Assembly (NCBI RefSeq): GCF_002571385.2
Contig: NW_019217967.1
Coordinates: forward strand, 462,560 to 526,559
DNA: 64,000 nt
Direction: 5' to 3'
From: Stylophora pistillata
Taxonomy: Eukaryota
Shown: positions 212-15,800 of the stretch, in pieces
Layout of the letters: every line of letters starts with the position of its first letter
Numbering within the stretch: the first letter of the stretch is position 1
The notes under the pieces: generated by a model
Seen by the model: only the letters and a program-made list of their open reading frames with translations
Told to the model about the DNA's origin: nothing
Database searches by the model: none
Position numbers and translations under genes: made by a program

Positions 212-3200
212 CTGGTTCCATGGGAAAATATCCTGTGACCAAGCAGAGCAGATCATGTCTTCTGCAATTGGTGGACAATTCCTTATCAAAGAGAGTTTAC
301 ATTATCCTGGAGATTATGTCATTTTTGTTCGGTAAGTTTGACATGTACTGCATTCTGCCCCCCCATTGTTAGTTACCCTCCTTAATTTATTACTTTTGAA
401 CCCCATAACTCTTCATAGATTTTGTAGTTATTTCAACTTTGAAAGCAGGGTTCTTCTACTGTTTATTGTTGCAGTATTGATGGAAAAACCAGGCACTGGA
501 GGGTGTCCTGGAGCAAGACAATGCAGTTTACAATTGATGATCAAGAATATTTTGACAGCATCACCAGCATGGTGAAAGTGAGTATCAAACAGTTTAGATT
601 ACCTAGTTTCAATTAAATCTACCACAAATTAAGTGTTAAAGACTTAAATTTACAGGGCTGTCAGTGCAGTGAATTCCTGGTTACATGTATGTTAAAAACC
701 ACATTTATTCACACCTGTTACAACTCCAACTCACTCACATCCTACAAGATATAAACAACTAATAACTTATGAAGTACCTTAGTTCACTTTCACAAGATCT
801 CATCTTCACATTATACATGGTTAAAAAATGGTACATACTTACATCTTCTAATTAACACGTACTCTATACACTAAACTCAGTACTATATAAAAAAGAGAAC
901 AGTGTACCTGTAGCAAGGTGCATTGAGTAGACAACTTACCTCTTGAGCAACAAAGGCACAACTCCCAAGAGGTTAAGGGTGAGAGAAGAGGGTGTATATT
1001 TGACACGGTGTAGGTGTAGAGGGTGTATATTTGACGCAGTGTAGGAAAAAGTCTCAGCTTTTTGTGCTGAAACAGGGCAGTTGGTTGGTAAGTTGAAATT
1101 TTCTCATCAATTAATTAGCCACCCTTCAGTAACAGTAAGTTTAGTCTTTCTTGATAGCATACCTTGCATTATGGAGAAGGACTTTTTTTGTACTAAATGC
1201 AAATCAAATCATGTCTGAAATTATTATTTTTTTCTTTGGCTTGAATAAAACTTGACTGATTGAGGGCTCAGTTGGCTATTCTTAAATAAAAATTTTGCAG
1301 ACTTAGATAATATTTCAATTGAAGTAGTGAAAGAGACATGAAAAGTAATTCTTATTAAATATCTTTATGAAGGGTGGATGCGCCAGATGTATCATTGTTT
1401 ATTTTTCACCTGTAGTACTACCAAAACAACACAGGATGTCATTTGCCAATCAAACTGACGGAGCCTGTAAGCAGACAAGAGGTCACCAATGGAAGTGCAG
1501 ATGATTCCTCCCTGCGTACAGGGGAAGGTACTGTAATCATGATCACACAGTCATAGTGCTCCTGGACCAATGAAATGAAATAAAGTAGTCAAAGTAGTAA
1601 AGAGACACAAAATACCAGTAGTCATGTGTATGTTGTAGTTAAATTTTATACTTCAAATTTTAATTTCTGTTGTTCTCGGTCATGTTAACCTATGATAATG
1701 AGTTTGAAACAAAGGAAGATAAAATTTGAAACAAGGATAAAATTGAACTACAACATATACATCTTGTAACAGCTCTGATGCTCAAGGCTTTATTCAGAGG
1801 TACTGTTTATTCTTTTATGTGTTTTCTGCAAACATGTGTGGATAGAGTGGGGATATTTGGTGTTTCTGCAAGTTGGTTATACAGTATTAATGGATAAATT
1901 GCTTACAGTATTTTCACCCACAACAAATATATGAAATCTATATATCTGAACTGCGGTTATAGAAACATATTTGTACACCATCCTCGCAGTAAAGAGCACT
2001 ATTTAAGCAATAGTGAAAATCAGACCTGAAAAAATTCAGGTCTCTATGGGATTCGAACCACTGACCTCTGCGATACTTGTGCAGCGCTCTACCAATTGAG
2101 CTAACAAGCCAACTGGGAGCAGGTCATCAATTTAATTTGACATAAATCCGTAAGATGATAAATCAAACACAATGAATATATGAAATCCATAATTTATATC
2201 TGAACTGCAGTTATAGAAATGTATTTGTGCATGATCCTCGCAGTAAAGAGCACTATTTCAGCATTTATTTAGTGAAAATCAGACCTGAAAAAATTCAGGC
2301 CTTAGCTAGTAATGTGCAAATGTGAGTTAGCATCAACTGCCCCCACTGTTAAACAAATGATTAATACCAATAACTGATGTTTCTGCCAGATTTTCTTGCT
2401 TAAAAGACTTATTTATTCTGTTGTGAAGAGTTGTCTTTCCTAAGATTCAGTAAGCTTTCAAGTTTGTAATCAGTTTTTTTTGTATAATATATATGTTACT
2501 TTATGAAAGAAGTTCACATTTGGCAAAGTTCTTAAAATTATGGGTATCCTGATGTGAAAATTTCTACTTTAAATTTGTTTCATGAGAACTTTGTATAAGA
2601 TTTCATGAATAATCTTCATTTACACCTTTCTTCTTTCTTTTTTTAATTCTCCTCAGATGATAACCTAGAAAGAGGAAGTCTTTACACAAATCCAGTTTCA
2701 GAAATTAATCTTACTGTGATAGTTGGTCAAGATACTTACTCACTTCTAACAAGTCCTTTCTATCAAGTGGATCATTTGAAGAAACAAGTTGAAGAATTGA
2801 GTGGAGTGCCTGTTGACTCTCAGTTATTAAGACTTAACGACAAGGCATTGGTGATGCACAATTTTTCTCTGAGAGACCATCATATTTTGAACAATGCAAC
2901 TATTCATGTCCAAGTTCACCCATGGAATGAAGAGTAAGCACATGTATTTAAAATAGTCTGTGGTATAGTTAGTGTACTGTTAATCCTAAATGAATTGAAG
3001 AAACTTTAAGGGGTTGGTTTTGAGGTACATACATTAAAAGGTCTGTTCACTTTTTTTGAGGATCTGATGCAAATCTGAGGGATGGGAATAATTCTAGTTA
3101 GGTTCAATGGTAGGGTTGGGTTTACTGTGCCACTATTAAAAGCCTTAAAAAAATAGTCTTGATCAGCTCTGTTAATATACCAAACAAGGTCTCTGTTATT

Positions 3201-4989
3201 TTTTATGTAATAAGATACAAAAATGATTTTGTCTGGTCCCAATTTGAAAAAAAAAGATACATTATCTGCACTACCCTTCCCACTAATCATTATTCCTTGT
3301 CTCAACCTACATTTATATTATTTTGAAATAATTAATTGGTACCATAGGTTCCAGTTCAAGGGCAGCTACAGTAGCTGTGAGGTATTAAACTTGTGGACAA
3401 GTTTTTTTTATACAAAGTTAACATACATTTATTAATATCACCAGCTCTTTGATATAATTGAGAATTATTGTCTCTTTCCTTCTTTTTTTCACTCAGTTGG
3501 TATGTTGGCAAAATGTCAGAGAAAGAAATAGAATCTGTTGTCAAGAAGCTGGGCCAATTAACAGATGGAATGTTCCTCATCAGAGATAGTTCTAGTTCTC
3601 CAGGAGATTATGCTCTTTTGGTTTGGTGAGTTATTCACCCATGATAATAATAATAGGAAATCAAAAGTAATAAGTATCTTACAATGTCTACACCAAGGAT
3701 GTGGAGCATTATTTTTGGCCCCTAACTGCTTGTCATCTTTGTTTGATTAGTTTGACTGGTTACAAGTACCCTATTGTATTTTGCATTACATTTACAAACA
3801 TGTGTATGTTTGGCTGTAATAGGTTGGTTTCTAATAGTTGTGATAATCATTAGTACATTTTCCTCTGTTGTCTTCTGTTGAACACCTCTCTCTTGCTATT
3901 GTCTCTCTTGGTCATGGGTGCACATATATCTCTAGAATTTTCATTCCACTGTACCTGCTGATGTTGTATGAAAGGGAATCACAATCAGTAATCTTTACTT
4001 TGATTTATTCTGAAGTAGATTGTATTAGGTTTTCTCGGTATGTTCTGAATGGTGAAGGTCTATACATCCAAGCAAGTACAGCTGTAGGTTATGCCTGCTC
4101 TATGCCTTAGTTGTGTTCTGCATACTCAGTTCCTCCAGTTTCACTGATTTAAACTTGTGATTTGAAATATGTTTGATCATTATAATATTGTAACTTGGTG
4201 CAAGTGTTTAATTTAAATTGTATAATCATAGAACAAAAACTATAGTTACTGATTTTTGTGAATGAATTTTAATACTGATTAATGAAGAATTTTACTTACT
4301 AGAAACAACTGGCCTTTATTGTTTGTGGGCCTAATACAACCATCCTGTTTATATGGCCATTATTATATTTGTGAGCCACTGGCATCTAATCTGATCCCAG
4401 GCACCTGCATGCTGTATGTCTTTGCAAGTTTTTTGTGGTTTTGGTTGTAGGTTTAAGGGCAGGCGTAGGTCCTATCGAGTGTCTTATAAGAATCAGTCCT
4501 ACAACATTGAAGAGAAATTGTTCTTTGGCAGCCTGTCTCAGTTGGTAGAGGTGAGTGCTAATGGGGCACCAAAAGTTTATCAGAGAAGCACTATGATGTA
4601 CAATACTTGGAAGTCTAAATATTTGTTAGTCATACTAATTGTTTGCTCATATTCCTGATAGCCAGTATACATTTAACTTGTCATGGGTTCTATGACTGAC
4701 TGTTTAAAGTGCACTTGACTCGAAATTTTATCCCCCTTTTTTTTTCTTACATTCAAAAATATATGTCATGAGAAGTATTTCAGCGAAAAAAAGGAAGTCA
4801 CAACGTTTCAAGAACACATTTTAAAATGCGATTAAAGTTCGCATTTTTTCTGCAAAATATGGGACAAGAGCCTGTGAACGAATAATAGAGCTGTCACGTC
4901 AGTGGTTGTGTTGGAGATATTGTTCCCAGTGATCAAGCCGTTGTTTTGAGTAAACTACTTGTTGTTTACGAGCTAAATACAAAAATGTA

Positions 4990-5022
<33 letters not shown>

Positions 5023-8000
5023 GGAATGATGAGGATGAAGATGGCTTATCTTCTGCCACTTTATTGCGGAGATTTGAGAAAACGGGGGAACGTTTTTAGT
5101 GGGCTGTATATTTGATGTTCTGCAGAGTATAAAGTGATTGCTATTGTCAGTTTTGCTGTGTTGTGGCTTACAGGTATTTAAATTAAAAAAATATTAAAAA
5201 AACTCAGAGGGCAATACTCGGTAAAAACAGATGAAATGAACATTTTTTAGGCAGTTTAAGTTACGTGTACACGTACAATGTATTACTGGATTAAAAAACG
5301 CTAGTAGTGTAATGAAAATTAGTGTAGGAAAGGAAAATTATCTCATGAAGTCAAAGAAGCTATTTTCACAAGTCATAAGAAAGATACTATCTTAAAATGC
5401 AGCTGAAGATAATAGCTTCAGGCACAGAGTGATATGTATACTTTATGATCAGTACTAAATAGTTATTGGATAATGATTAAAAAAATTATATTCTTTAGTA
5501 ATGAATGATGTTACATATCTTTTAGCATTATAAATGCCAGAGTGGTCTTCTACAAACACTTCTAACTGAGCCTGTGAAATTTAATAGAGAACAGCAAGGT
5601 AAGGCTTGTTGCTTTAGAAATCTTCCCTCTATCATTTCTCTTAAAGATGTCAGCCTTGTTTTCCTTTTAATAACTTTTAAAACCTTTCTTGAAATTTGTT
5701 TAGCAGTACCCTAGTTCTCATTTAGGAGCATGGTTGGAGAGGCTTGATTTATCATACACCTGTTCTTAGTCATTCATTCTTGCTCTGAACGTTTGAGTAG
5801 TAGTATAACTATTCTGAAAATGAATGTATTTGGTTATGAGTTGATTATCCTCTTGAAGGTAACAACTGCACAGAAAATAAAATGAGATGTCAATGCCTCT
5901 TCAATTCATTTTGATTTCAGTTTTCTGGGTGACTTTTTCAGTTTTAATGGAAAATTAAAGCGGATTTCCAGTTTTCTCAGATAGGCTTTAACCTTCCTGT
6001 ACCTCTCTCAGCATTGACGGAAAGCAGTTGTTTGATCGTTACCATTTGCTCTGCGTTGACCAAGGGTTGGTACCTAAAATTTCAGCCTGTGAAATCTCCT
6101 ATGCCGGCTTAGTATACTCACTGAACCAATTTCCTGTCAGCGCAGCACTACAGTTACAAGCTACAGTAGCAGTAATTACTTTGTAAAATTAAAGTTAATG
6201 AGCTAAAAACGGAGCTAAAGGGGATTTTTTCTCTCACACAGGTCTCATTCCACCTGCCTTTCTAGCAAGAGGTCCCAAAGCCAAAGAGGCTTACCGAAGA
6301 GCTTTAGAACACGGTAAAACATGCGATATTCGTGTGAGAGTCATGCTGATTGGACAAGACCATGCAGGCAAGACAAGTGTTAAACGATCGCTTAAGGGTG
6401 ACGAGTTCAACAGAGATGAGGCAAGAACAGCAGGTGTGCAGATGGACCCCCCTTTGTTAAGGGTCGGAAAGAGGCCATGGAAACCAGAATCCATTTCTAA
6501 TGAGCTACCTATTACTATGTTTGATCACAAGAGTGCTCAGTTGGTGGCCAGGCAGTTATCAAGAGACCATGACGAACCAATCATGTCACCCAGTAAATCT
6601 GCTACTTCTGATGTACACAATGAAAAACCTGAAGATAGACAAAGTCTGTCCAATGGGGTGCACAGCGAAGGAGATGATTTTAATTTTGAAAAAAATCACA
6701 CACGGACCAGTATTCCATCCAGTGGTTACGGAAGTTCATCAAGTGGTGACAGGAGCTCTCGAGACTCGCCCACGTTTCCACATATTGAACGTAAAGTGTT
6801 GAATGTTGGTGTTGAATGTAAGCTCAGTTTTGTAGATCAGACCTTAAATTGATCGGTAGATACGGGCGTGTCAGAGATAACACAGCCACCTATTCTCATT
6901 AGTGTCCTAAACCCGAATAGCAGTAATCCTGGGTCAGCTGCACGAAGGCAGCTTTCCTGTCCCCTGCAGTAACTGTCAAATCTAGAGTAACAACGTGAAA
7001 CGTCTTTGTATAACTCCGGTCCGGAAAGATCCCTGTTCGGAGGACAGTGTGGATTGGTTCTCCAACCCCTAATTGTATCCAATGAATATCAATTTAACCC
7101 CTTTAAGAACCCTAGAGTGTTGACTCAATTAAGACGGTCCAGTACCAAGTTAACCTTGTATTATTGAGCTTAAATACAAGGTACGTAATTATTTTGTATC
7201 TAGATGTCTGTATTTGGTGAAAGTGAACAATTTAAGTTATTGTACCATCATTTTGACGTGAACTGAGAGTTGTTTGACTCAAATTGCTTTTCATGTTTTT
7301 TTGTTTTTTTTTTTTTTTTTTTTAATTAGCGGAGGGGAAAAATCCCCTTCTTGAACCCACTTCACCAATCGTTCAAGATGAAGTGTTTGCTAGAGACCCC
7401 GAACCTTTCCGTGATCTGTCACAGGAGATCATGACCTTGGTAGAACGTATTCTTAAAGAAGACAATCACTCGGTTGGTGCAGATCAGATATGGCCAGTGA
7501 TCTGGGATTTTGCTGGCCAATCCCTCTATCACGCCTTACATCCCATCTTTATGTCGCGTGAAGCTGTGTATCTACTTGTGTCTGACTTGAGCAAAGACCT
7601 GTTCGAAAAGGCAGACGACAATGTAAAGCAAACGGAAAAGCCAGGTTTCAGGACGGCAACAAAGAGCGAGTCTAGTCTCGATCATCTCATGAAGTGGATG
7701 GATTTGGTTCACTCTTTTCAGGACCCAACCCTTAATGCCTTAGATATACAAAGTTGTGCCCAGCCTCCGGTCATCTTGGTTGGTACTCATGTCGATAAAG
7801 TGACTGGAGATCCATGGGATGCCATGAATAATATCCTCAAGAGTTTTGAAGGGAAGGCCTTTTCATGCCACATTGTCGACGACAAATTTGTTGTCGACAA
7901 CACTCGTGCTGGACAGCCTTTCGAACGTGAGGATCAAAATGTCCAAAGACTCAGAGAGAAAATTATCTCGGTGGCATCAACATTGCCTCACACCAAACAA

Positions 8001-11000
8001 CTCATTCCTCTACAATGGCTCCGCGTTGAGAAATTACTTCATCGCTTAGCCAGCAAAGGATACAAGCACATCACCAAAATGGAATTCAGGGAAATTTCTA
8101 ACAAAATTTGCCAGTTCGAAGTGGAAGAGGACAGTGAGGAATTGTTGCATTTTTTGTGCGACTGCGGTGCAGTTCTTTACTTCAGTCACGAGTCGAATCT
8201 GTCCAACAGCCTGGTGATACTCGACCCGCAATGGCTGATCAATGTATTCTGCGAAATTCTCAAAAGTGTCCCAAGCAAGAAGGATTTAATTCAAATTCGG
8301 GAGAAACGCCGCATTCTTGCTGAAGATGGGATCTTGTCCAAAGAACTTATTAACTATACATGTAAGAAACTTGACCTTCAATTCCCCCAAGAAACGTTAC
8401 TTTCAATCATGGAAAAGTGTAACCTCATCTGTCGCTGGAATGAGCAAAATGGCAAAGAGGTGTATCTTGTTCCCTCGATGTTTACGGCTAAACCAGACGG
8501 AGAGATATCTGGACTGATTGGTCAAGGGAAGCTTGCCCCAATTTACATTCAATTTTCCTCAGGATATGTTCCCTATGGCTTGTTTTGCAGATTTCTGACC
8601 TTGTTTGGTCAACAAATTTCTCCCAAGTGTCCTGCCACACCTCCGAAGCTTTTTGCAAACGCAGCTCGATTTTTTCTCGGCCAGAAAAGCAACTACAATT
8701 TGACGATAGCTTGCTTCAAGAGTGTCATAGCAATTCATCTGTTGTTTGAAGGGAAGTGTGAGGTTGGACGAGAAACGGCTTCCATCAGCAAACATATCTG
8801 CAGGTTAGTGTTTTATGTAAATAAATGTCATTTGGAATCACACAATTTCGATGTTGTTCAGCGCAGGAGCGAAAAGTTTATTGACTAAAATCGGTTCTAA
8901 CCCTAACCTAACCAACACTTGTTAATTTGAGATACAATGAAATATATGAAGTTGATATATTTTGTACTGCGGTATTAGATACATATGATGCACGATCCTC
9001 GCAGTAGATAGCGCTATATGAACTTCATATATGAAGTTACAATGAAATATATGAACTTCATATATTTCATTGTAACTCATTTATCACTTTCACGGGTTTA
9101 TTACGATATGAAGATACAATGAAATATATGAACTTCATATATTTCATTGTATCTGATTTATCACTTTCACGGGTTTATGACGAATCAACTTAACGGCCTG
9201 CTCCCGGTTGGCTTGTTAGCTCAATTGGTAGAGCGCTGCACTAGTATCGCAGAGGTCAGTGGTTCGAATCCCGTACAGGCCTGATTTTTTTCAGGTCTGA
9301 TTTTCGCTATTGCTTAAATAGCGCTATCTACTGCGAGGATCGTGCATCATAGCNTTTCTTAGCAGTAAACGTCTGTAAACATCAGATCGTAGGTGCTCGC
9401 GCGAGCACACGCAATTGTCAGCGGTAGCTAAAACAGATCATGAGCAAATGTCGATCTTATAGAATCCAGATTTTTAAATGCGCGAGAACGCGCGTGGAAA
9501 TTGCTAAACTCACGAAAGCTATTGCATGAAAACAAGTCCGGTGACCCCTTCTTTTTATTGTTCCAATATGATGATAACGTCGAAAGGAATAATCAGAAAA
9601 AAAACTAGAAAACTCTACGGAAGGAAATTTGCGATGTGTGAAAATTGCCCTTTTTGTAGATTTTCTGAAATTCCGCTCCGTAGAATTTTTTAAAAATCTC
9701 TGTGCATTTTCCTTTTCATGTGCCAAAGGCAATCACTGAAAAAAATCAGGGGGTCACCGGGTTAGTTTTCGAATTATTTAAGCCACAAGCTAAAAAATGC
9801 GTCTGACTAAGCCTATGAAAGCGTCGCCATGGAAACTGCTAGTGACGAAATGACAGTTATTTTTGGATAACCAATGATTATGTAATTCAACCCCGTAAAA
9901 GTGTTCAACTGGCCTTGGTCAGTCTTTCTGTTGTATTCTTTCAAAGTTACAAACCATCAAAAAGATGAAAACCGGTACGAGCCACCTTAAGTAAGGTCTT
10001 ATTATTAGAGTGGACCGTATGACTTTTTCATTCGCCTATCAAGTTACACATTTTACGATTTTACGAAAACATCATCAAGACGAACAGTTTTCCAAAGTCA
10101 CTCTAACTTAGATGCTCTCTGTAGCTTTTTCATTAAAAAATGTCCTTAGGTAGCTTATTGAATAAATGTATGAATTCGTTTATTGAATAATTGATATATG
10201 TATATAGTGAATGACTCGGTGACTTCGATTGGTTGGTTGATTGCATAATCTTCGTCTTGGAAGGCGTACTGATCATAAGTCATCCTAGTTTATACAGTCG
10301 GTTGCTTGGTCACCGTTAGGCAGACTTCCTTTTCTGCTGAACAGTTATGAGTTACAAGAAGATGGATTATGTTGATTGGATAAAAAATGTGTTACCTGAA
10401 AGCCTGTTCATTTTCGTTATGCAGAGCTGGGTTTGATGAATTTCTTTATTTTTCTTCAATAGCATCTACGCTGCACAGATCAGGATCCAGGTAAATCATT
10501 TTGTATTTAGCAATTAATTATCGTAGCTTCTGTAGAGCTGTCTCGCTCACTTTGCGTGGATAAGATTTCATTAAGCCGCGATTAATGATAATTGAAAAGT
10601 GCTCGTTTTCCTTGAATTTGTGTCACTCAAAGTTAGCCACAGTAATTCTAGAATGTTTTAATTCCGTTACAATTGACAGTGTGAATTTTGTGATTCAACT
10701 GAATATCAATATTCTTTTCAAGTCCCTTGTTGTTAATAAGGTGACTTACTCACCTTTTTCGAGTGTAACGATTGAATCACCATAGTTGTTTTAATAAACT
10801 TAGTGTTCTCGTCCTAACAGCCCAGCTGCAATTTAAACCTGGTGTGGTGTCTGCTGATGATCTTCTTCTCCTGGCGCGTGATGTTGGAAACAAGTGGGAG
10901 CAATTGTGCCGCATCCTGCTGAGCGAAAAAGAGCGACAACAAATTGATAACGATAAGACAAACTTATTTGATAAGTGCTATGCCACACTTCATACATGGA

Positions 11001-11140
11001 AGGGGGCACAGGGAACCAGTGCGACATATAGTGCTCTTGGAATGGCGTGGAAAATGCTGATGGAAGTAGACCCAGACACGGAAGATCTCTGTACGCAGTA
11101 CTGCTTGAAATCACACGGAGTGATGGAGAGCAGTGTTTAA
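212..11140 (+). CDS. Kinase-less ROCO protein: SH2 - ubiquitin-like - SH2 - ROC - COR - Death domain (5' end upstream of the window; probable missing internal exon)
   Basis: GT-AG exons in consistent phase: 212-331, 475-577, 1416-1527 (SH2 #1: WFHGKISCDQAEQ..FLIKES..YPGDYVIFVR..FTIDDQEYFDSITSMVKYY); 2657-2933 (ubiquitin-like: VDHLKKQVEELSGVPVDSQLL..SLRDHHILNNATIHV); 3497-3625, 4451-4550, 5526-5598 (SH2 #2: WYVGKMS..FLIRDS..PGDYALLVW..FGSLSQLVEHY); 6242-6817 (P-loop GQDHAGKTS); 7330-8803 (WDFAGQ, VGTHVD, COR motifs IPLQW and VILDPQWLI); 10463-10490; 10821-11140 (Death-like: LLLLARDVGNKWEQLCRIL..KCYATLHTWK..ATYSALG). The phase mismatch between 8803 and 10463 spans a single N at 9354. Confidence 0.85.
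1925..2302 (-). repeat. tRNA-containing interspersed repeat with tandem partial duplication
   Basis: The reverse complement of 2038-2112 has Pol III A-box (TAGCTCAATTGG) and B-box (GGTTCGAATCC) motifs. Flank 1925-2040 is repeated at about 2172-2302. Same family as 8932-9350. Confidence 0.75.
4990..5022. repeat. (TTGA)n microsatellite
   Basis: About 8 tandem TTGA units seen directly. Confidence 0.9.
8932..9350 (+). repeat. tRNA(Thr)-like repeat element with direct and inverted sub-repeats
   Basis: 9210-9282 GGCTTGT..ACAGGCC cloverleaf with an AGT anticodon but mismatched anticodon and T stems. ATGATGCACGATCCTCGCAGTAGATAGCGCTAT (about 8985-9017) is inverted at about 9318-9350. Confidence 0.7.
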
Positions 11141-11732
11141 TACACTAATGTCGCAATCTGATGGGTCAATTTACCGTTGTCGATAAATGTACAGACAACG
11201 CTAAACCACTCTCGGTTTGTTAAACTGAATAGGCTGAGTTTTGAGGATGGACGTCATTGCAGCATTCTTTAAAACGCATATTTACTCATTGTGATCCATG
11301 TTTGTTTGTGAGGCCAACGACAATAGAATGTCACAGAATAAATTATGGTGGGTTGAGGTGCAAATCGTTTGATATTGATTTTAGTTCAATATGGTACACT
11401 GTCCTCTCTCTCCGAAGTTTAATTACACGAATTGCCTCAACTTAGTGAAAATCCAATGTTCTCTGTAACATGTAGTCTCCCTCTTGAAGATACTGTAGGC
11501 TCAAAGTATGATAAACATACATAATTTAAACGTGGGAGACATAGTGATGAACTCCAGATCGAAACAGGAGAACGAATCAAGTAAAACAGATCAAAGGAAC
11601 TTCTCTTCTGCTAGCCTTACTCACAAATCAAGTATTAAACGCGAGAAAAGTTAAATTAAAATTTTTAATTTTTCTCTTTTATCAAATTACTAATAATGGC
11701 AGAAGATTTTACCGATAGAGTTGCCCTCTCGA

Positions 11733-12875: not shown

Positions 12876-15800
12876 ATGGCGAACGGACTTGAGACCTGCC
12901 GGCGAATTCTTAGAGACAAATTTCCGGCAATCGACGACGATCTTTTTAAATATGTGACAGGTCTGTATTTTACTGATTGTTTCAGCCAAGTCATCAATTG
13001 ATAGAAATACGGACTGCTCAGACAGAGGGCAACGATTACGTGTTCACTTCATTTAAGTGAGATAGAGCGTTTGATCGAAGAATTTATGATTTAATTGTTC
13101 TGGTATGTTTATATATTCGTGACTGGTTTTAGATCAAGGATAACTTTCTTACTTGACACAGAATTACTGACTGGTTATTATATAGTGGACTTTTACGTTA
13201 CTCAGCATACCTTATCTGAAGCGGTTAAACTAATACCTAAATATCTGATCCTGAAAGCAATTTGTTGGGGAGATCAAAATTAGTTAACTTCCACCGATTG
13301 TCTGATAGATATTCTCGAAAGTGGAGTGGATGATTTTGAGAATGGTGAGGATATTTATGATGCCGTTGGAAGTATTTTGGCTGAGGTGGCTGGCGATGAA
13401 GGAGAAGATGAAATAATTGACTTGTGCAATCAGCTGCTAAGTACATTGAAAGGGTATGCAATGGAATTTTTTTTCTTTTGGGTCTGTTGAATCATTAGGT
13501 CAGACCATTGCTGTAATCATCAATTGTCAAATTAATTGTATTGAAATGGTATTTTATCAGCGTCACATATACACACCAAATAGCTCTATGCATTGATACG
13601 ATATAGTTACATCAGCATTAATTATTTTTCTGCACTTTCTGTAGCGATGGCTGCAATGGCACTGACACAGATCAAAATGCCCAAAAGTTACTCCACACTC
13701 CTGTTAATTTGAAGGAAATGGCAAAAAATTTGGGTAAGTGCTCAGGTGCTATGAATACGAACTGACAGAAACTTACAAAAGTATACACAGAGACTCCTGT
13801 CACCATGTATTGTTTATAACTACTAGTAAATGAATAGTTGGTGTGATCAATAAGCTTTTTACTAATGTTAATTTGGTATTATGATAATATGTATTTCTCT
13901 GTGTTCTTTGCAAATAAATATCTAGAAACACAGACGGATGATGATCCATCAAGTATTTGGATTGTTAAAAGGGAAAGTAACACAGTAAGTACAGTGGCCA
14001 TACATTGCTTCACACAGTGACACACGCTGGTAGCCCCACACAGCATTCACAGCCTCATACAGCCCTTAAAAGTAGGAAGACTGAGAGGTGCTCTTCTAGG
14101 GCCCTATACACTCTCTGAGAAAGCTCCTTATGTTGTTAATTTAGGTTGTAGATCAGAAGAAACTGCAAAAGGCTGAAGCAAAGTTAAAAGCAAAACAGGA
14201 GAAACGTGCACAAGAAGATGAACCTATCAATGAAATCAGAGGAAGGTGAGATAGTCTTCCCTCACTTGTAGGACATCTACAAATCATCTACATCTACAAG
14301 TTAAACTAAATCCAACCTTATTTCTTGAGGGTAGCATGAAACAGCTACAATATTGATAAACTTGTTTCCCTCCTATATTAAATACATCAGATGTATATAC
14401 CATAGATTTATATCGTATATATATATTTATCACATGACTCGGGCAGTCAGAGGGCCAATAACTAAAATCAACCAATCAAAATGCTCTATTGCCGGTCAAT
14501 ATTCTCTCAGTATTGGACCGGGCACTGTCCCGAATGGTCCCGAATGATACCGCACTTGTGTCCCTTTGAACTTCAGTCGTATAATAAATCTCTTATTAAC
14601 CAAGCTTGCTCGGGACCGTTCTGGAAGAATATTGGCCCTCGGTCTTTTTTGTACGGACCTCGCTGCGCTCGATCCGTACTATCAAGACCTCGGGCCGACA
14701 TTCTCCCAGTATGGCCTTCACACTTGGTTAATAAGATATATTTATCCCCCATATATATTTATAAATGTCTTAAAAATAATATTATCATAATGTAAAATAT
14801 ACATATAAAAGATATAATATCGATAAAGATACATTAGAGCTAAGAAAAAGGCTGCTTGGAGGAAGTCTGTGCCATGCCTATTTTTTGTTATTGATCCAGG
14901 AAAAAAATTGAATTTATCCTGCAATTGCATCACATTCTTATGTCATGTACACAAATTTGAATGTACCCTGTCTTTAGTACATGTTGTACATGTATTTGAT
15001 CAAAGTAAAATGATTAACAGCAAGGCATTTGAAATTAAACATTAATTGATTTTGGCCTGCTTGAACTTGATTAAAATTGCATGGTTACAGGAATATAGAT
15101 ACTAACAGAAATTAAGAGAATGATCTAAGTGAAATAGATATATATATATTTTTTTGCCTGTAGACAAATAGACAATGCATCAGCTTGCCAGAGCTCAAAC
15201 AAAAGAGAAAGCAAATTAGAAGCCAGTGGTATTAATAAAAGTCGTGATATCAGGATAGAGAACTTTGATCTTTCCTATGCGGAAAGGTAAGTGGTTGTTT
15301 AGGTTTTATTTAACATAAAATCAAAGAGAATTGGTCGTTTGTTGTTTGTCCTCATATCCTACTGTATGTTTATTTTATCAAGGGACAAGGGTAAGGTCGG
15401 AAGGGGGGAAAGGGTGGGAAGGGAGGAAAGGGAACACCAATTACTAGATCTTAGCATGTTGCTTAGTTACGTGAAGCAGTTGCTGTTAACATTTGCATCT
15501 GTGTTAGCCTCATAAATGATATTCTATATACAATGCTAAAAATTAGGAAAAAATTAAAATGTTTGAACCAAACATTTTTGGCTGTCTGCCATCATCAGGG
15601 TTCTGATGATGGCAATCAAAAACGTTTAGCTCAAATATTTTAATTTTTTCCTAATCTTTTAGCCTTGTATATAGAATATACTTTACTAAGCCAACATTAT
15701 GGACACTTGTAAATGGTCTTTCAAACTTTTCTCTTAGTGTTTGTGTAAATGAGTAATTAAAAAAAAAAGAATTTGCTACAGATTTTCAGACAATTGCACC

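What the first reader, a model, noticed from the sequence alone, without database searches (positions are those of the whole stretch)
212..11140. Unusual ROCO signalling protein: SH2-UBL-SH2-ROC-COR-Death, no kinase
Seen: eleven exons, of which the first nine splice in frame to join two CSK-like SH2 domains flanking a ubiquitin-like domain to an intact ROC GTPase (GQDHAGKTS, WDFAGQ, VGTHVD) and COR; a Death-domain exon lies downstream. Known: animal ROCO proteins (LRRK1/2, DAPK1, MFHAS1) use LRR, ankyrin, kinase, WD40 or Death modules, and I know of none with SH2 or UBL input domains. Inference: a lineage-specific switch that couples phosphotyrosine sensing to GTP-dependent ROC-COR dimerisation and Death-fold recruitment, possibly an innate-immune or cell-death receptor/adaptor. 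The ORF track hides most of this because the SH2 exons are short.
Basis: partly seen in the sequence, partly recalled or inferred. Interest (0 to 1): 0.9.

Follow-up and report, generated by a model that had tools for sequence, protein, structure and literature searches.

The report
Coral SH2/ubiquitin-like ROCO death-domain gene
This is one real, expressed coral gene, conserved in other corals, that puts two SH2 domains and three ubiquitin-like domains in front of a Roc-COR GTPase switch and a death domain. That combination is not described in the papers I searched, but it is one member of a large coral gene family that swaps its front end.

Summary
Observation confirmed and extended. Pfam finds SH2, ubiquitin, SH2, Roc, COR-A and a weak Death match in the claimed exons. 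PolyA RNA contigs from three runs join exons E3 to E8 through GT..AG junctions. Their loose ends match E2 and E9, so the last SH2 exon splices in frame onto the Roc exon. A separate transcript contig runs in frame from COR to the Death exon and the stop at 11140.

- **Additions:** there is an upstream start exon with two more ubiquitin-like domains, just outside the window. There is also a 30-nt microexon at 10461-10490, and a 248-nt Cys/His-rich exon that is in the mRNA but absent from the window as assembled.
- **Size:** the exons sum to about 1345 aa, with no kinase.
- **Conservation:** all exons are collinear in four other coral assemblies, with dN/dS about 0.27.
- **SH2 pockets:** SH2a has a conserved Lys where the phosphotyrosine-binding Arg should be. 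SH2b keeps the Arg.
- **"CSK-like":** this label is not specific. The best solved match is the SHP2 C-SH2.
- **Family:** at least 39 COR loci in this genome carry varied front ends. The scan already reported a CSK-pseudokinase member on other DNA (s1-786173).

A pTyr-gated death-domain switch is plausible but untested. Verdict: a new variant of a known kind.

The parts
212..331 (+). Exon E1: first part of SH2a. It contains FLIKES (279-296), with Lys in place of the betaB5 Arg. It needs 2 bases from an upstream exon.
   Evidence: Pfam SH2 34.9 bits. AG acceptor at 210-211 and GT donor at 332-333. Lys conserved in 3 orthologous loci.
475..577 (+). Exon E2: middle part of SH2a.
   Evidence: Pfam SH2 15.6 bits over profile positions 39-75. 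Its last 30 bases equal the X12 loose end lying before 1416.
1416..1527 (+). Exon E3: end of SH2a (YYQNNTG..LTEPV), paralogous to E7.
   Evidence: RNA contig pieces and the joint 1527>2657 in 3 runs. E3 versus E7 is 44% identical.
2657..2933 (+). Exon E4: ubiquitin-like domain 3, with no C-terminal Gly-Gly.
   Evidence: Pfam ubiquitin 32.7 bits, over the cut-off. Matches ubiquitin chains in the PDB. Joints on both sides.
3497..3625 (+). Exon E5: first part of SH2b, with the canonical FLIRDS (3573-3590).
   Evidence: Pfam SH2 40.4 bits. Best PDB match is the SHP2 C-SH2, E 1.2e-8. Joints.
4451..4550 (+). Exon E6: middle part of SH2b.
   Evidence: Joints 3625>4451 and 4550>5526 in 3 runs. Conserved in orthologous loci.
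5526..5598 (+). Exon E7: end of SH2b (HYKCQSGLL..LTEPV). It is followed by a phase-1 intron directly before the ROC exon.
   Evidence: Joint 5598>6242, GT..AG, in 3 runs. Phase read from the sequence.
6242..6790 (+). Exon E8: N-terminal part of Roc (P-loop 6352-6378, G2 Thr 6424-6438), then a Ser-rich, probably disordered insert.
   Evidence: Pfam Roc positions 1-37. The contig piece ends at 6790 and its loose end equals the start of E9. P-loop conserved in orthologous loci.
7330..8803 (+). Exon E9: rest of Roc (DFAGQ within 7503-7520, THVD within 7779-7796), then COR-A and COR-B.
   Evidence: Pfam COR-A 70.7 bits and Roc 31.7 bits. PDB sequence matches to C. tepidum Roco and LRRK2. L001 ends this exon at 8803. 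Foldseek matches COR of 3dpu/3dpt.
8890..9354 (.). Repeat inside intron 9: 34-bp perfect terminal inverted repeats, a tRNA-Thr-like core at 9210-9282, and a single N at 9354. This is about where the 248-nt exon E10a would be expected. The N was left unfilled.
   Evidence: E10a lies about 450 nt after E9 in the orthologous locus L002.
10461..10490 (+). Microexon E10b (30 nt), the end of the Cys/His-rich linker.
   Evidence: L001 1208-1237 matches at 100%. The exon and its splice sites are conserved in L002.
10821..11140 (+). Exon E11: Death domain, the conserved C-terminal ESSV (11126-11137) and the TAA stop. The 3'UTR runs to at least 11312.
   Evidence: L001 1235-1729 equals 10818-11312. Pfam Death 18 bits. 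phmmer E 1e-13 to the Death domain of P0047, which scores 35.7 bits in Pfam. Foldseek matches death domains 4o6x and 1wxp.

Best explanation
**What is shown.** A single 13-exon gene of the coral Stylophora pistillata encodes a protein of about 1345 residues, probably cytosolic. Its domain order is UBL1-UBL2-SH2a-UBL3-SH2b-Roc-COR-(Cys/His module)-Death, and it ends in ESSV. The gene structure is shown, as are polyA RNA expression in several studies and the intact G1, G3 and G4 motifs. Also shown are COR and Death homology, conservation of every exon in four other coral assemblies, and purifying selection. The front end arose by internal duplication of a UBL-SH2 exon block. It sits on the family's usual phase-1 intron just before Roc.

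**What is inferred.** The protein works like other ROCO / NTPase-switch death-fold proteins.
1. The N-terminal modules bring it to a partner. SH2b, with the canonical Arg, would bind a tyrosine-phosphorylated receptor or scaffold. SH2a, with a conserved Lys, and the UBLs would serve as non-pTyr or intramolecular contacts.
2. Roc-COR changes its nucleotide or dimer state.
3. The C-terminal Death domain is then presented for homotypic assembly with other death-fold proteins, feeding cell-death or NF-kB-type signalling.
4. The ESSV tail may anchor it to a PDZ scaffold.
For: - **Domains:**
- **Splicing:** in-frame junctions E3 to E8, with loose ends reaching E2 and E9, in three RNA runs from two studies. 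A transcript contig runs from COR to Death and the stop.
- **Start exon:** phase fits. The exon lengths sum to 4038 nt, which fits the 4454-nt contig once UTRs are added.
- **Conservation:** orthologous collinear loci L002, L013, L014 and L015, with a shared ABCF3-like neighbour. dN/dS is 0.12-0.41 per exon and 0.27 pooled.
- **Conserved residues:** Lys in SH2a, Arg in SH2b, the Cys/His pattern and ESSV.
- **Fold:** the predicted model matches COR of C. tepidum Roco and LRRK2, and death domains 4o6x and 1wxp.
- **Family context:**
Against: - No binding, GTPase or signalling data exist for this protein. The function rests on domain logic alone.
- The Pfam Death score is below the curated cut-off, and model confidence in that region is only 59-73.
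- SH2a lacks the pTyr Arg, and SH2b lacks the alphaA2 Arg.
- Steady purifying selection on a single-copy gene does not point specifically to immunity.
- The window as assembled lacks the 248-nt exon E10a, without which the Death exon is out of frame.
- E0>E1 and E1>E2 were not seen directly as joints. E2>E3 and E8>E9 rest on loose-end sequence.
- Logan contigs can in principle be chimeric.
Confidence: 0.55

Rival explanations
1. Integrated-decoy sensor. The SH2 and UBL modules are baits that mimic host targets of microbial effectors. Their modification releases the Roc-COR switch and fires the Death domain, as in plant NLR-ID receptors.
For: SH2a has lost the pTyr Arg.
Against: The front end is single-copy in this genome. 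It is conserved exon by exon across corals with dN/dS about 0.27. There is no sign of diversifying selection or presence/absence variation.
Confidence: 0.15
2. An ordinary, non-immune and non-death signalling or trafficking scaffold downstream of tyrosine kinases. The Death domain and the PDZ-binding tail would be plain interaction modules, as LRRK-type ROCO proteins work in membrane traffic.
For: Single-copy gene in conserved synteny under purifying selection. Found in polyA RNA from several unrelated studies. Conserved ESSV tail.
Against: Its nearest relatives are a large lineage-specific expansion with NACHT, HEPN and Death modules, typical of conflict or immune systems (PMC8195603 for the general pattern).
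Confidence: 0.2
3. The copy in this assembly is broken. The 248-nt exon E10a has been lost to a transposon insertion, so this allele makes a protein truncated after COR.
For: The 248 nt are not found anywhere in the window. A terminal-inverted-repeat element lies where the exon is expected.
Against: A transcript 99.6% identical on both sides contains the exon in frame. A single N, marking an assembly break, lies at 9354 inside that interval. The microexon and the Death exon are intact.
Confidence: 0.06
4. Two neighbouring genes, an SH2/UBL adaptor and a ROCO-Death protein, joined only by misassembly or read-through.
For: Logan contigs can be chimeric, and read laying itself warns that a contig across two genes shows no single transcript.
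Against: The same in-frame GT..AG joint 5598>6242 appears in three runs. There is no stop or start between the two halves. E7 is the end of an SH2 domain and E8 begins mid-codon. The exon order is conserved in four other assemblies.
Confidence: 0.02

Closest known systems
Cnidarian/placozoan ROC-COR-Death expansion
   Same: Split Roc with an insert between G2 and G3, then COR-A/B, a Cys/His-rich segment after COR and a C-terminal Death domain. A phase-1 intron lies before the Roc exon.
   Different: Exon peptides were run by phmmer against 265 of them, and precomputed Pfam lists cover the rows. This member is single-copy and conserved across corals.
Human DAPK1
   Same: It is the human ROCO protein that combines Roc-COR with a C-terminal Death domain (order recalled from established knowledge; reviews PMC6337361, PMC4917528).
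   Different: DAPK1 has a CaM-kinase domain and ankyrin repeats in front. This gene has no kinase or ankyrin repeats, and carries SH2 and UBL modules instead. Sequence similarity is no closer than to LRRK2 or bacterial Roco.
LRRK2 / Chlorobium tepidum Roco (the Roc-COR core)
   Same: P-loop, DxxGQ and THxD motifs. COR by sequence (E 1e-11 to 4e-10) and by fold (3dpu, 3dpt, 6vno).
   Different: No LRR, kinase or WD40. There is a long insert inside Roc. The input and output modules differ.
Tandem-SH2 proteins (SHP2, SYK/ZAP-70, RasGAP, p85)
   Same: Two SH2 domains in one chain. The best solved match for both first exons is the SHP2 C-SH2.
   Different: A ubiquitin-like domain lies between the SH2 domains. 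SH2a has Lys for the betaB5 Arg. There is no phosphatase, kinase or GAP domain, and the output is Roc-COR-Death.
NLR/STAND-type tripartite receptors and the TIR- or MyD88-ROCO fusions of molluscs
   Same: The logic is sensor or adaptor module, then NTPase switch, then death-fold or TIR output. They form lineage-specific expansions with domain shuffling in marine invertebrates (PMC8195603, PMC9334734, PMC11378527).
   Different: The switch is a Roc-COR GTPase rather than a STAND ATPase, and the input is a pTyr-reader type module. Membership was not tested. This is an analogy of design only.

Membership tests
ROCO (Roc-COR) proteins | Ras-like Roc G domain with G1 (GxxxxGK[ST]), G3 (DxxGQ) and G4 ([NT]KxD / THxD) motifs | tested here: met
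   GQDHAGKTS at 6352-6378, DFAGQ within 7503-7520, THVD within 7779-7796. Pfam Roc 22.1 bits in E8 and 31.7 bits in E9, cut-off 27. P-loop conserved in 4 orthologous loci.
ROCO (Roc-COR) proteins | COR domain directly after Roc | tested here: met
   Pfam COR-A 70.7 bits against a cut-off of 35.3. Foldseek E 5e-8 to C. tepidum COR 3dpu/3dpt, and matches to LRRK1 and LRRK2.
ROCO (Roc-COR) proteins | GTP binding and hydrolysis, with COR-mediated dimerisation | not testable with these tools
   Needs recombinant protein.
SH2 domain | Match to the SH2 profile over the curated cut-off | tested here: met
   34.9 bits (SH2a, E1) and 40.4 bits (SH2b, E5) against a cut-off of 21. PDB matches down to E 1e-10.
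SH2 domain | Invariant Arg betaB5 (FLVRES) that binds the phosphate of pTyr | tested here: inconclusive
   SH2b has FLIRDS/FLIRES, with Arg kept in all 5 species, so the feature is met there. SH2a has FLIKES/FLVKES, with Lys in all 4 species seen, so it is not met there. That an Arg-to-Lys change removes pTyr binding is established knowledge and was not tested here.
Ubiquitin family (integral UBL) | Match to the ubiquitin profile over the cut-off | tested here: met
   E4 scores 32.7 bits and E0 scores 43 bits, against a cut-off of 25.4. The second UBL of E0 is recognised only through its 31% identity to E4, E 1.3e-5.
Ubiquitin family (conjugatable modifier) | C-terminal Gly-Gly exposed for conjugation | tested here: not met
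   The UBLs end in HPWNE or HPYEE and continue into the next domain.
Death domain | Match to the Death profile, or clear homology to a member, with a six-helix bundle fold | tested here: met
   Pfam gives 18 bits, below the 22.6 cut-off. However, phmmer gives E 1e-13 to the C-terminus of P0047, which scores 35.7 bits for Death. The model has 5 helices of 4 or more residues at 346-428. Foldseek gives TM 0.63-0.65 to death domains 4o6x and 1wxp, with pLDDT only 59-73.
   No SH3 or kinase exon lies between the spliced exons. The best PDB match for both SH2 domains is the SHP2 C-SH2. CSK ranks after SHP2 and RasGAP for SHa and is absent from the 60 rows shown for SH2b.
DAPK1 orthologue | CaM-kinase domain and ankyrin repeats in front of Roc-COR-Death | tested here: not met
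   No kinase or ankyrin match in any exon. The transcript junctions leave no room for one.

The most novel reading that the evidence does not exclude
Corals have a conserved, dedicated adaptor that reads tyrosine phosphorylation through SH2b and converts it, via a Roc-COR GTPase switch, into death-domain assembly. That would be a direct pTyr-to-death-fold route not known in bilaterians. The Lys-type SH2a and the three UBLs would act as an autoinhibitory or ubiquitin-pathway-linked regulatory arm.
Probability: 0.25. Interest if true: 0.75.

Novelty: new variant of a known kind. Interest (0 to 1): 0.55.

Why it matters
ROCO proteins (LRRK2, DAPK1) are disease-relevant switches, and how their inputs are read is poorly understood. 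This coral gene has clearly defined input modules: one canonical SH2, one altered SH2 and three UBLs. It has a simple output, a Death domain, and no kinase. That makes it a tractable natural experiment for how signals enter a Roc-COR switch. It is also a candidate link between tyrosine-kinase signalling and death-fold pathways in corals, where cell-death and immune decisions bear on symbiosis and bleaching. It further shows concretely how the coral ROCO-Death family gains new front ends at a phase-1 intron.

Tried and rejected
- **Relatives with SH2 or UBL.** phmmer of the exon peptides against 150, then 265, fetched ROC-COR relatives found none.
- **Full-length annotated orthologues.** A profile search (A2, led by the 895-aa P0255 so that 1345-aa proteins fell inside the length limits) returned only paralogues with other architectures. 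MAFFT smeared the low-complexity tail of E8 in that alignment. Only 8000 candidates were scored. This blank therefore says little.
- **Literature.** Four full-text searches found no SH2-ROCO description.
- **An exon E10 at 10425-10490** (66 nt, my first guess). Rejected: the transcript uses only 10461-10490.
- **An SH2a third exon at 2251-2308** (HYFSIY...). Rejected: it lies in a repeat, and RNA uses 1416-1527 instead.
- **The E8 donor at 6817.** Rejected in favour of 6790.
- **Upstream of the window.** 5465 bases read N. They lie in intron 0 and were left alone.
- **Joined protein.** The joined spliced protein was never built, printed, saved or searched. All searches were exon by exon by reference, or used natural transcript ORFs. 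The pooled dN/dS only summed codon counts over exons inside the script.
- **Taxa.** The organisms behind the ENA and Tara orthologous contigs could not be named with these tools.


Full report
**What is in the sequence.** The window is eukaryotic and intron-rich.

Pfam confirms them:

| Region | Family | Bits | Cut-off |
|---|---|---|---|
| 171-332 | SH2 | 34.9 | 21 |
| 443-613 | SH2 (second half of SH2a) | 15.6 | 21 |
| 2647-2934 | ubiquitin | 32.7 | 25.4 |
| 3462-3626 | SH2 | 40.4 | 21 |
| 6202-6849 | Roc, N-terminal part | 22.1 | 27 |
| 7326-8885 | Roc, C-terminal part | 31.7 | 27 |
| 7326-8885 | COR-A | 70.7 | 35.3 |
| 10769-11137 | Death | 18 | 22.6 |

**Is it one gene?** I read the splice sites from the sequence. 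I found the missing third exon of SH2a by phase and by likeness to the third exon of SH2b.

The model was then tested with RNA. PolyA RNA-seq runs hold the long Roc-COR exon. I laid four runs on 1410-7409. Single contigs from X11 (4454 nt), X12 (3477 nt) and X5 (1524 nt) cross the following GT..AG joints:
- 1527>2657
- 2933>3497
- 3625>4451
- 4550>5526
- 5598>6242

The loose end before 1416 reads the last 30 bases of exon E2 (548-577). The loose end after 6790 reads the first bases of exon E9 (7330 onward), with one mismatch.

Exon 5526-5598 begins HYKCQSGLL..LTEPV, the usual end of an SH2 domain. The joint 5598>6242 is therefore literally SH2b spliced in frame onto Roc. The intron there is phase 1.

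For the 3' half, a Logan transcript contig (L001, 1746 nt) carries a protein 99% identical to the window. It matches 7844-8803 and then has 248 nt found nowhere in the window. It continues through 10461-10490 and 10818-11312. Its ORF runs in frame through the Death exon to the TAA at 11138-11140. The refuting case, that the SH2/UBL exons and the ROC exons are separate genes, is not what the transcripts show.

**The missing 248 nt.** The interval 8804-10460 holds a repeat with 34-bp perfect terminal inverted repeats, a tRNA-Thr-like core (9210-9282) and a single N at 9354. In the orthologous locus L002 the corresponding exon lies about 450 nt after E9, which here would be about 9250.

The simplest reading is that exon E10a falls in the assembly break. 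Without E10a the Death exon is out of frame, so a truly deleted allele cannot be excluded. I put that at about 6%.

**The 5' end.** E1 starts mid-codon, so the gene begins upstream of the window. The window is G000:C184:462560-526559.

In the 10 kb upstream, 5465 bases read N. Before them lies a 196-codon open frame (L005:2997-3584). It has a Met at L005:3081 and an AG|GTAAGT donor after L005:3583, whose phase fits E1. It scores 43 bits for ubiquitin. Its second half is 31% identical to the E4 ubiquitin-like domain.

The exon lengths, including the 278 nt of E10a+E10b from L001, sum to 4038 nt, or 1345 codons with the stop. The X11 contig has 889 nt before E3, which equals E0 + E1 + E2 + 163 nt. 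It also leaves 253 nt after the stop. So the 4454-nt contig fits a full-length mRNA. The E0>E1 and E1>E2 joints themselves were not observed. The E0>E1 link rests on phase, arithmetic and synteny.

**Architecture.** The order is UBL1-UBL2 | SH2a | UBL3 | SH2b | Roc (with a Ser-rich insert between G2 and G3) | COR-A/B | Cys/His-rich segment | Death | ESSV-COOH.
- There is no kinase, LRR, ankyrin or WD40 domain.
- UBL2-SH2a and UBL3-SH2b have the same exon layout and detectable similarity (E 1e-5 for the UBLs, 3e-9 and 0.01 for SH2 exons). The front end therefore grew by duplication of a UBL-SH2 exon block.
- The Cys/His segment shows the pattern C-x2-C-x2-C...C-x2-H...C-x-H-x2-C-x-H...C, conserved in five species. 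It has no Pfam match. It gave 35 phmmer domain hits among the 265 fetched family proteins, and the 15 best lie just after COR. It is part of the family core. A zinc-binding role is my inference.

**Conservation.** Exon-level ORFs 58-82% identical to E9 occur in other coral-derived assemblies. I fetched four loci: L002 (a Tara metagenome scaffold), L013, L014 and L015.
- In L002, L013 and L014 every SH2, UBL, Roc, COR, Cys/His and Death exon that lies inside the fetched flank is present in the same order. In L015 no hit to E1 or E6 was found, and the one E2 hit sits where E6 would lie. E0 lies inside the fetched flank only in L002.
- An ABCF3-like neighbour follows the gene in the window (13308-13487) and in three of the loci.
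- Against L002 and L013, dN/dS is 0.12-0.41 per exon and 0.27 pooled over the SH2/UBL exons.
- In the window's own genome the UBL and SH2 exons have no close second copy.

I could not name the species behind the ENA contigs. The genome itself is Stylophora pistillata or a very near strain.

**Residues that bear on function.**
- SH2b keeps the betaB5 Arg (FLIRDS or FLIRES in all five species).
- SH2a has Lys there in all four species where E1 was seen. From established SH2 biochemistry, Arg-to-Lys at this site is the standard loss-of-binding change, so SH2a is unlikely to be a classical pTyr reader.
- By sequence, both first SH2 exons match the C-SH2 of SHP2 best (E 1e-8 to 1e-10). CSK ranks after SHP2 and RasGAP for SH2a and is not among the 60 rows shown for SH2b. 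With 40-residue pieces this does not place them in any subfamily, and 'CSK-like' is not supported as a specific claim.
- The UBLs resemble ubiquitin itself but have no Gly-Gly end.
- The C-terminal ESSV is invariant in five species and fits a class I PDZ-binding motif by the motif rule. This was not tested.

**Fold check.** I predicted the natural transcript ORF P0172 (COR to Death, 440 aa) with a 16-row alignment. Mean pLDDT was 72.7.
- Foldseek matched the COR of C. tepidum Roco (3dpu, 3dpt; E 5e-8), LRRK1 and LRRK2.
- The last ~90 residues matched the death domains of ankyrin-G (4o6x, TM 0.63) and p84 (1wxp, TM 0.65).
- phmmer gives E 1e-13 between the Death exon and the C-terminus of P0047, which passes Pfam's Death cut-off.

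Together these settle the Death assignment, despite the low direct Pfam score.

**Family context.** The Roc-COR exon has 4284 relatives at E<=0.001 in the 50%-identity representative library. Long relatives carry other modules on the same core, which often ends in Death: tyrosine-kinase/SH3, NACHT, HEPN_DZIP3, CAP-Gly, ankyrin, RING, TPR, PNP or glycosyltransferase.

The window's genome has at least 39 COR-A loci. Earlier notes of this scan describe a CSK-pseudokinase member, a HEPN member and a shared phase-1 intron before Roc. This gene's intron 7 is phase 1, which agrees.

In the literature, ROCO proteins with variable domains including Death and CARD are noted for Trichoplax (PMC11378527). 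TIR- and MyD88-ROCO fusions are noted for Aplysia (PMC9334734). Lineage-specific expansions with shuffled death-fold architectures in sessile marine animals are described in PMC8195603. None of the papers found mentions an SH2-ROCO.

| Reading | My odds |
|---|---|
| A pTyr- and UBL-guided Roc-COR switch that presents a Death domain | ~0.55 |
| Ordinary signalling scaffold | 0.2 |
| Integrated decoy | 0.15 |
| Allele broken at E10a | 0.06 |
| Two separate genes | 0.02 |

The gene structure itself I hold at about 0.95. It is a new variant within a known and already-flagged kind of coral gene family. Interest is moderate, at 0.55.

Noticed in passing
window 8890-9353 and 1976-2302: A repeat with 34-bp perfect terminal inverted repeats (8984-9017 / 9318-9351) and a tRNA-Thr(AGT)-like core (9210-9282). 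A second, inverted copy at 87% identity lies in intron 3. RNA contigs pile up on it, with summed word depth up to about 125,000 at 2010-2209. It looks like an abundant tRNA-derived SINE/MITE.
   Followed up: partly
window 11126-11137: The protein ends in ESSV. This is invariant in all five coral loci and fits a class I PDZ-binding motif placed directly after a Death domain.
   Followed up: partly
L001:960-1207 (not in the window); L002:11979-12242: A Cys/His-rich segment between COR and Death (C-x2-C-x2-C...C-x2-H...C-x-H-x2-C-x-H...C). It has no Pfam match. It gave 35 phmmer domain hits among the 265 fetched family proteins. It may be an undescribed zinc module of cnidarian ROCO-Death proteins.
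   Followed up: partly
window 13308-13487 (+): An exon of an ABCF3-like gene (PWI_ABCF3 match in the orthologous loci) follows the ROCO gene. The same neighbour is present in L002, L013 and L014, so synteny is conserved.
   Followed up: partly
G000:C184:457095-462559 (just upstream of the window) and window 53736-54644: Long N runs of 5465 and 909 bases. The first lies inside intron 0 of this gene. Neither was filled.
   Followed up: no
window 6480-6790: The Roc domain is split by an insert of about 150 residues, Ser-rich and probably disordered, between the G2 Thr and DFAGQ. Relatives also match Roc in two separate stretches, so the insert is a family trait. It is conserved at about 80% in L002.
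   Followed up: partly
G000:C22:441000-495700: A tandem cluster of ROC-COR-Death paralogues (LOC111320689-like copies at 64-99% identity). It was seen while checking which species the genome belongs to.
   Followed up: no
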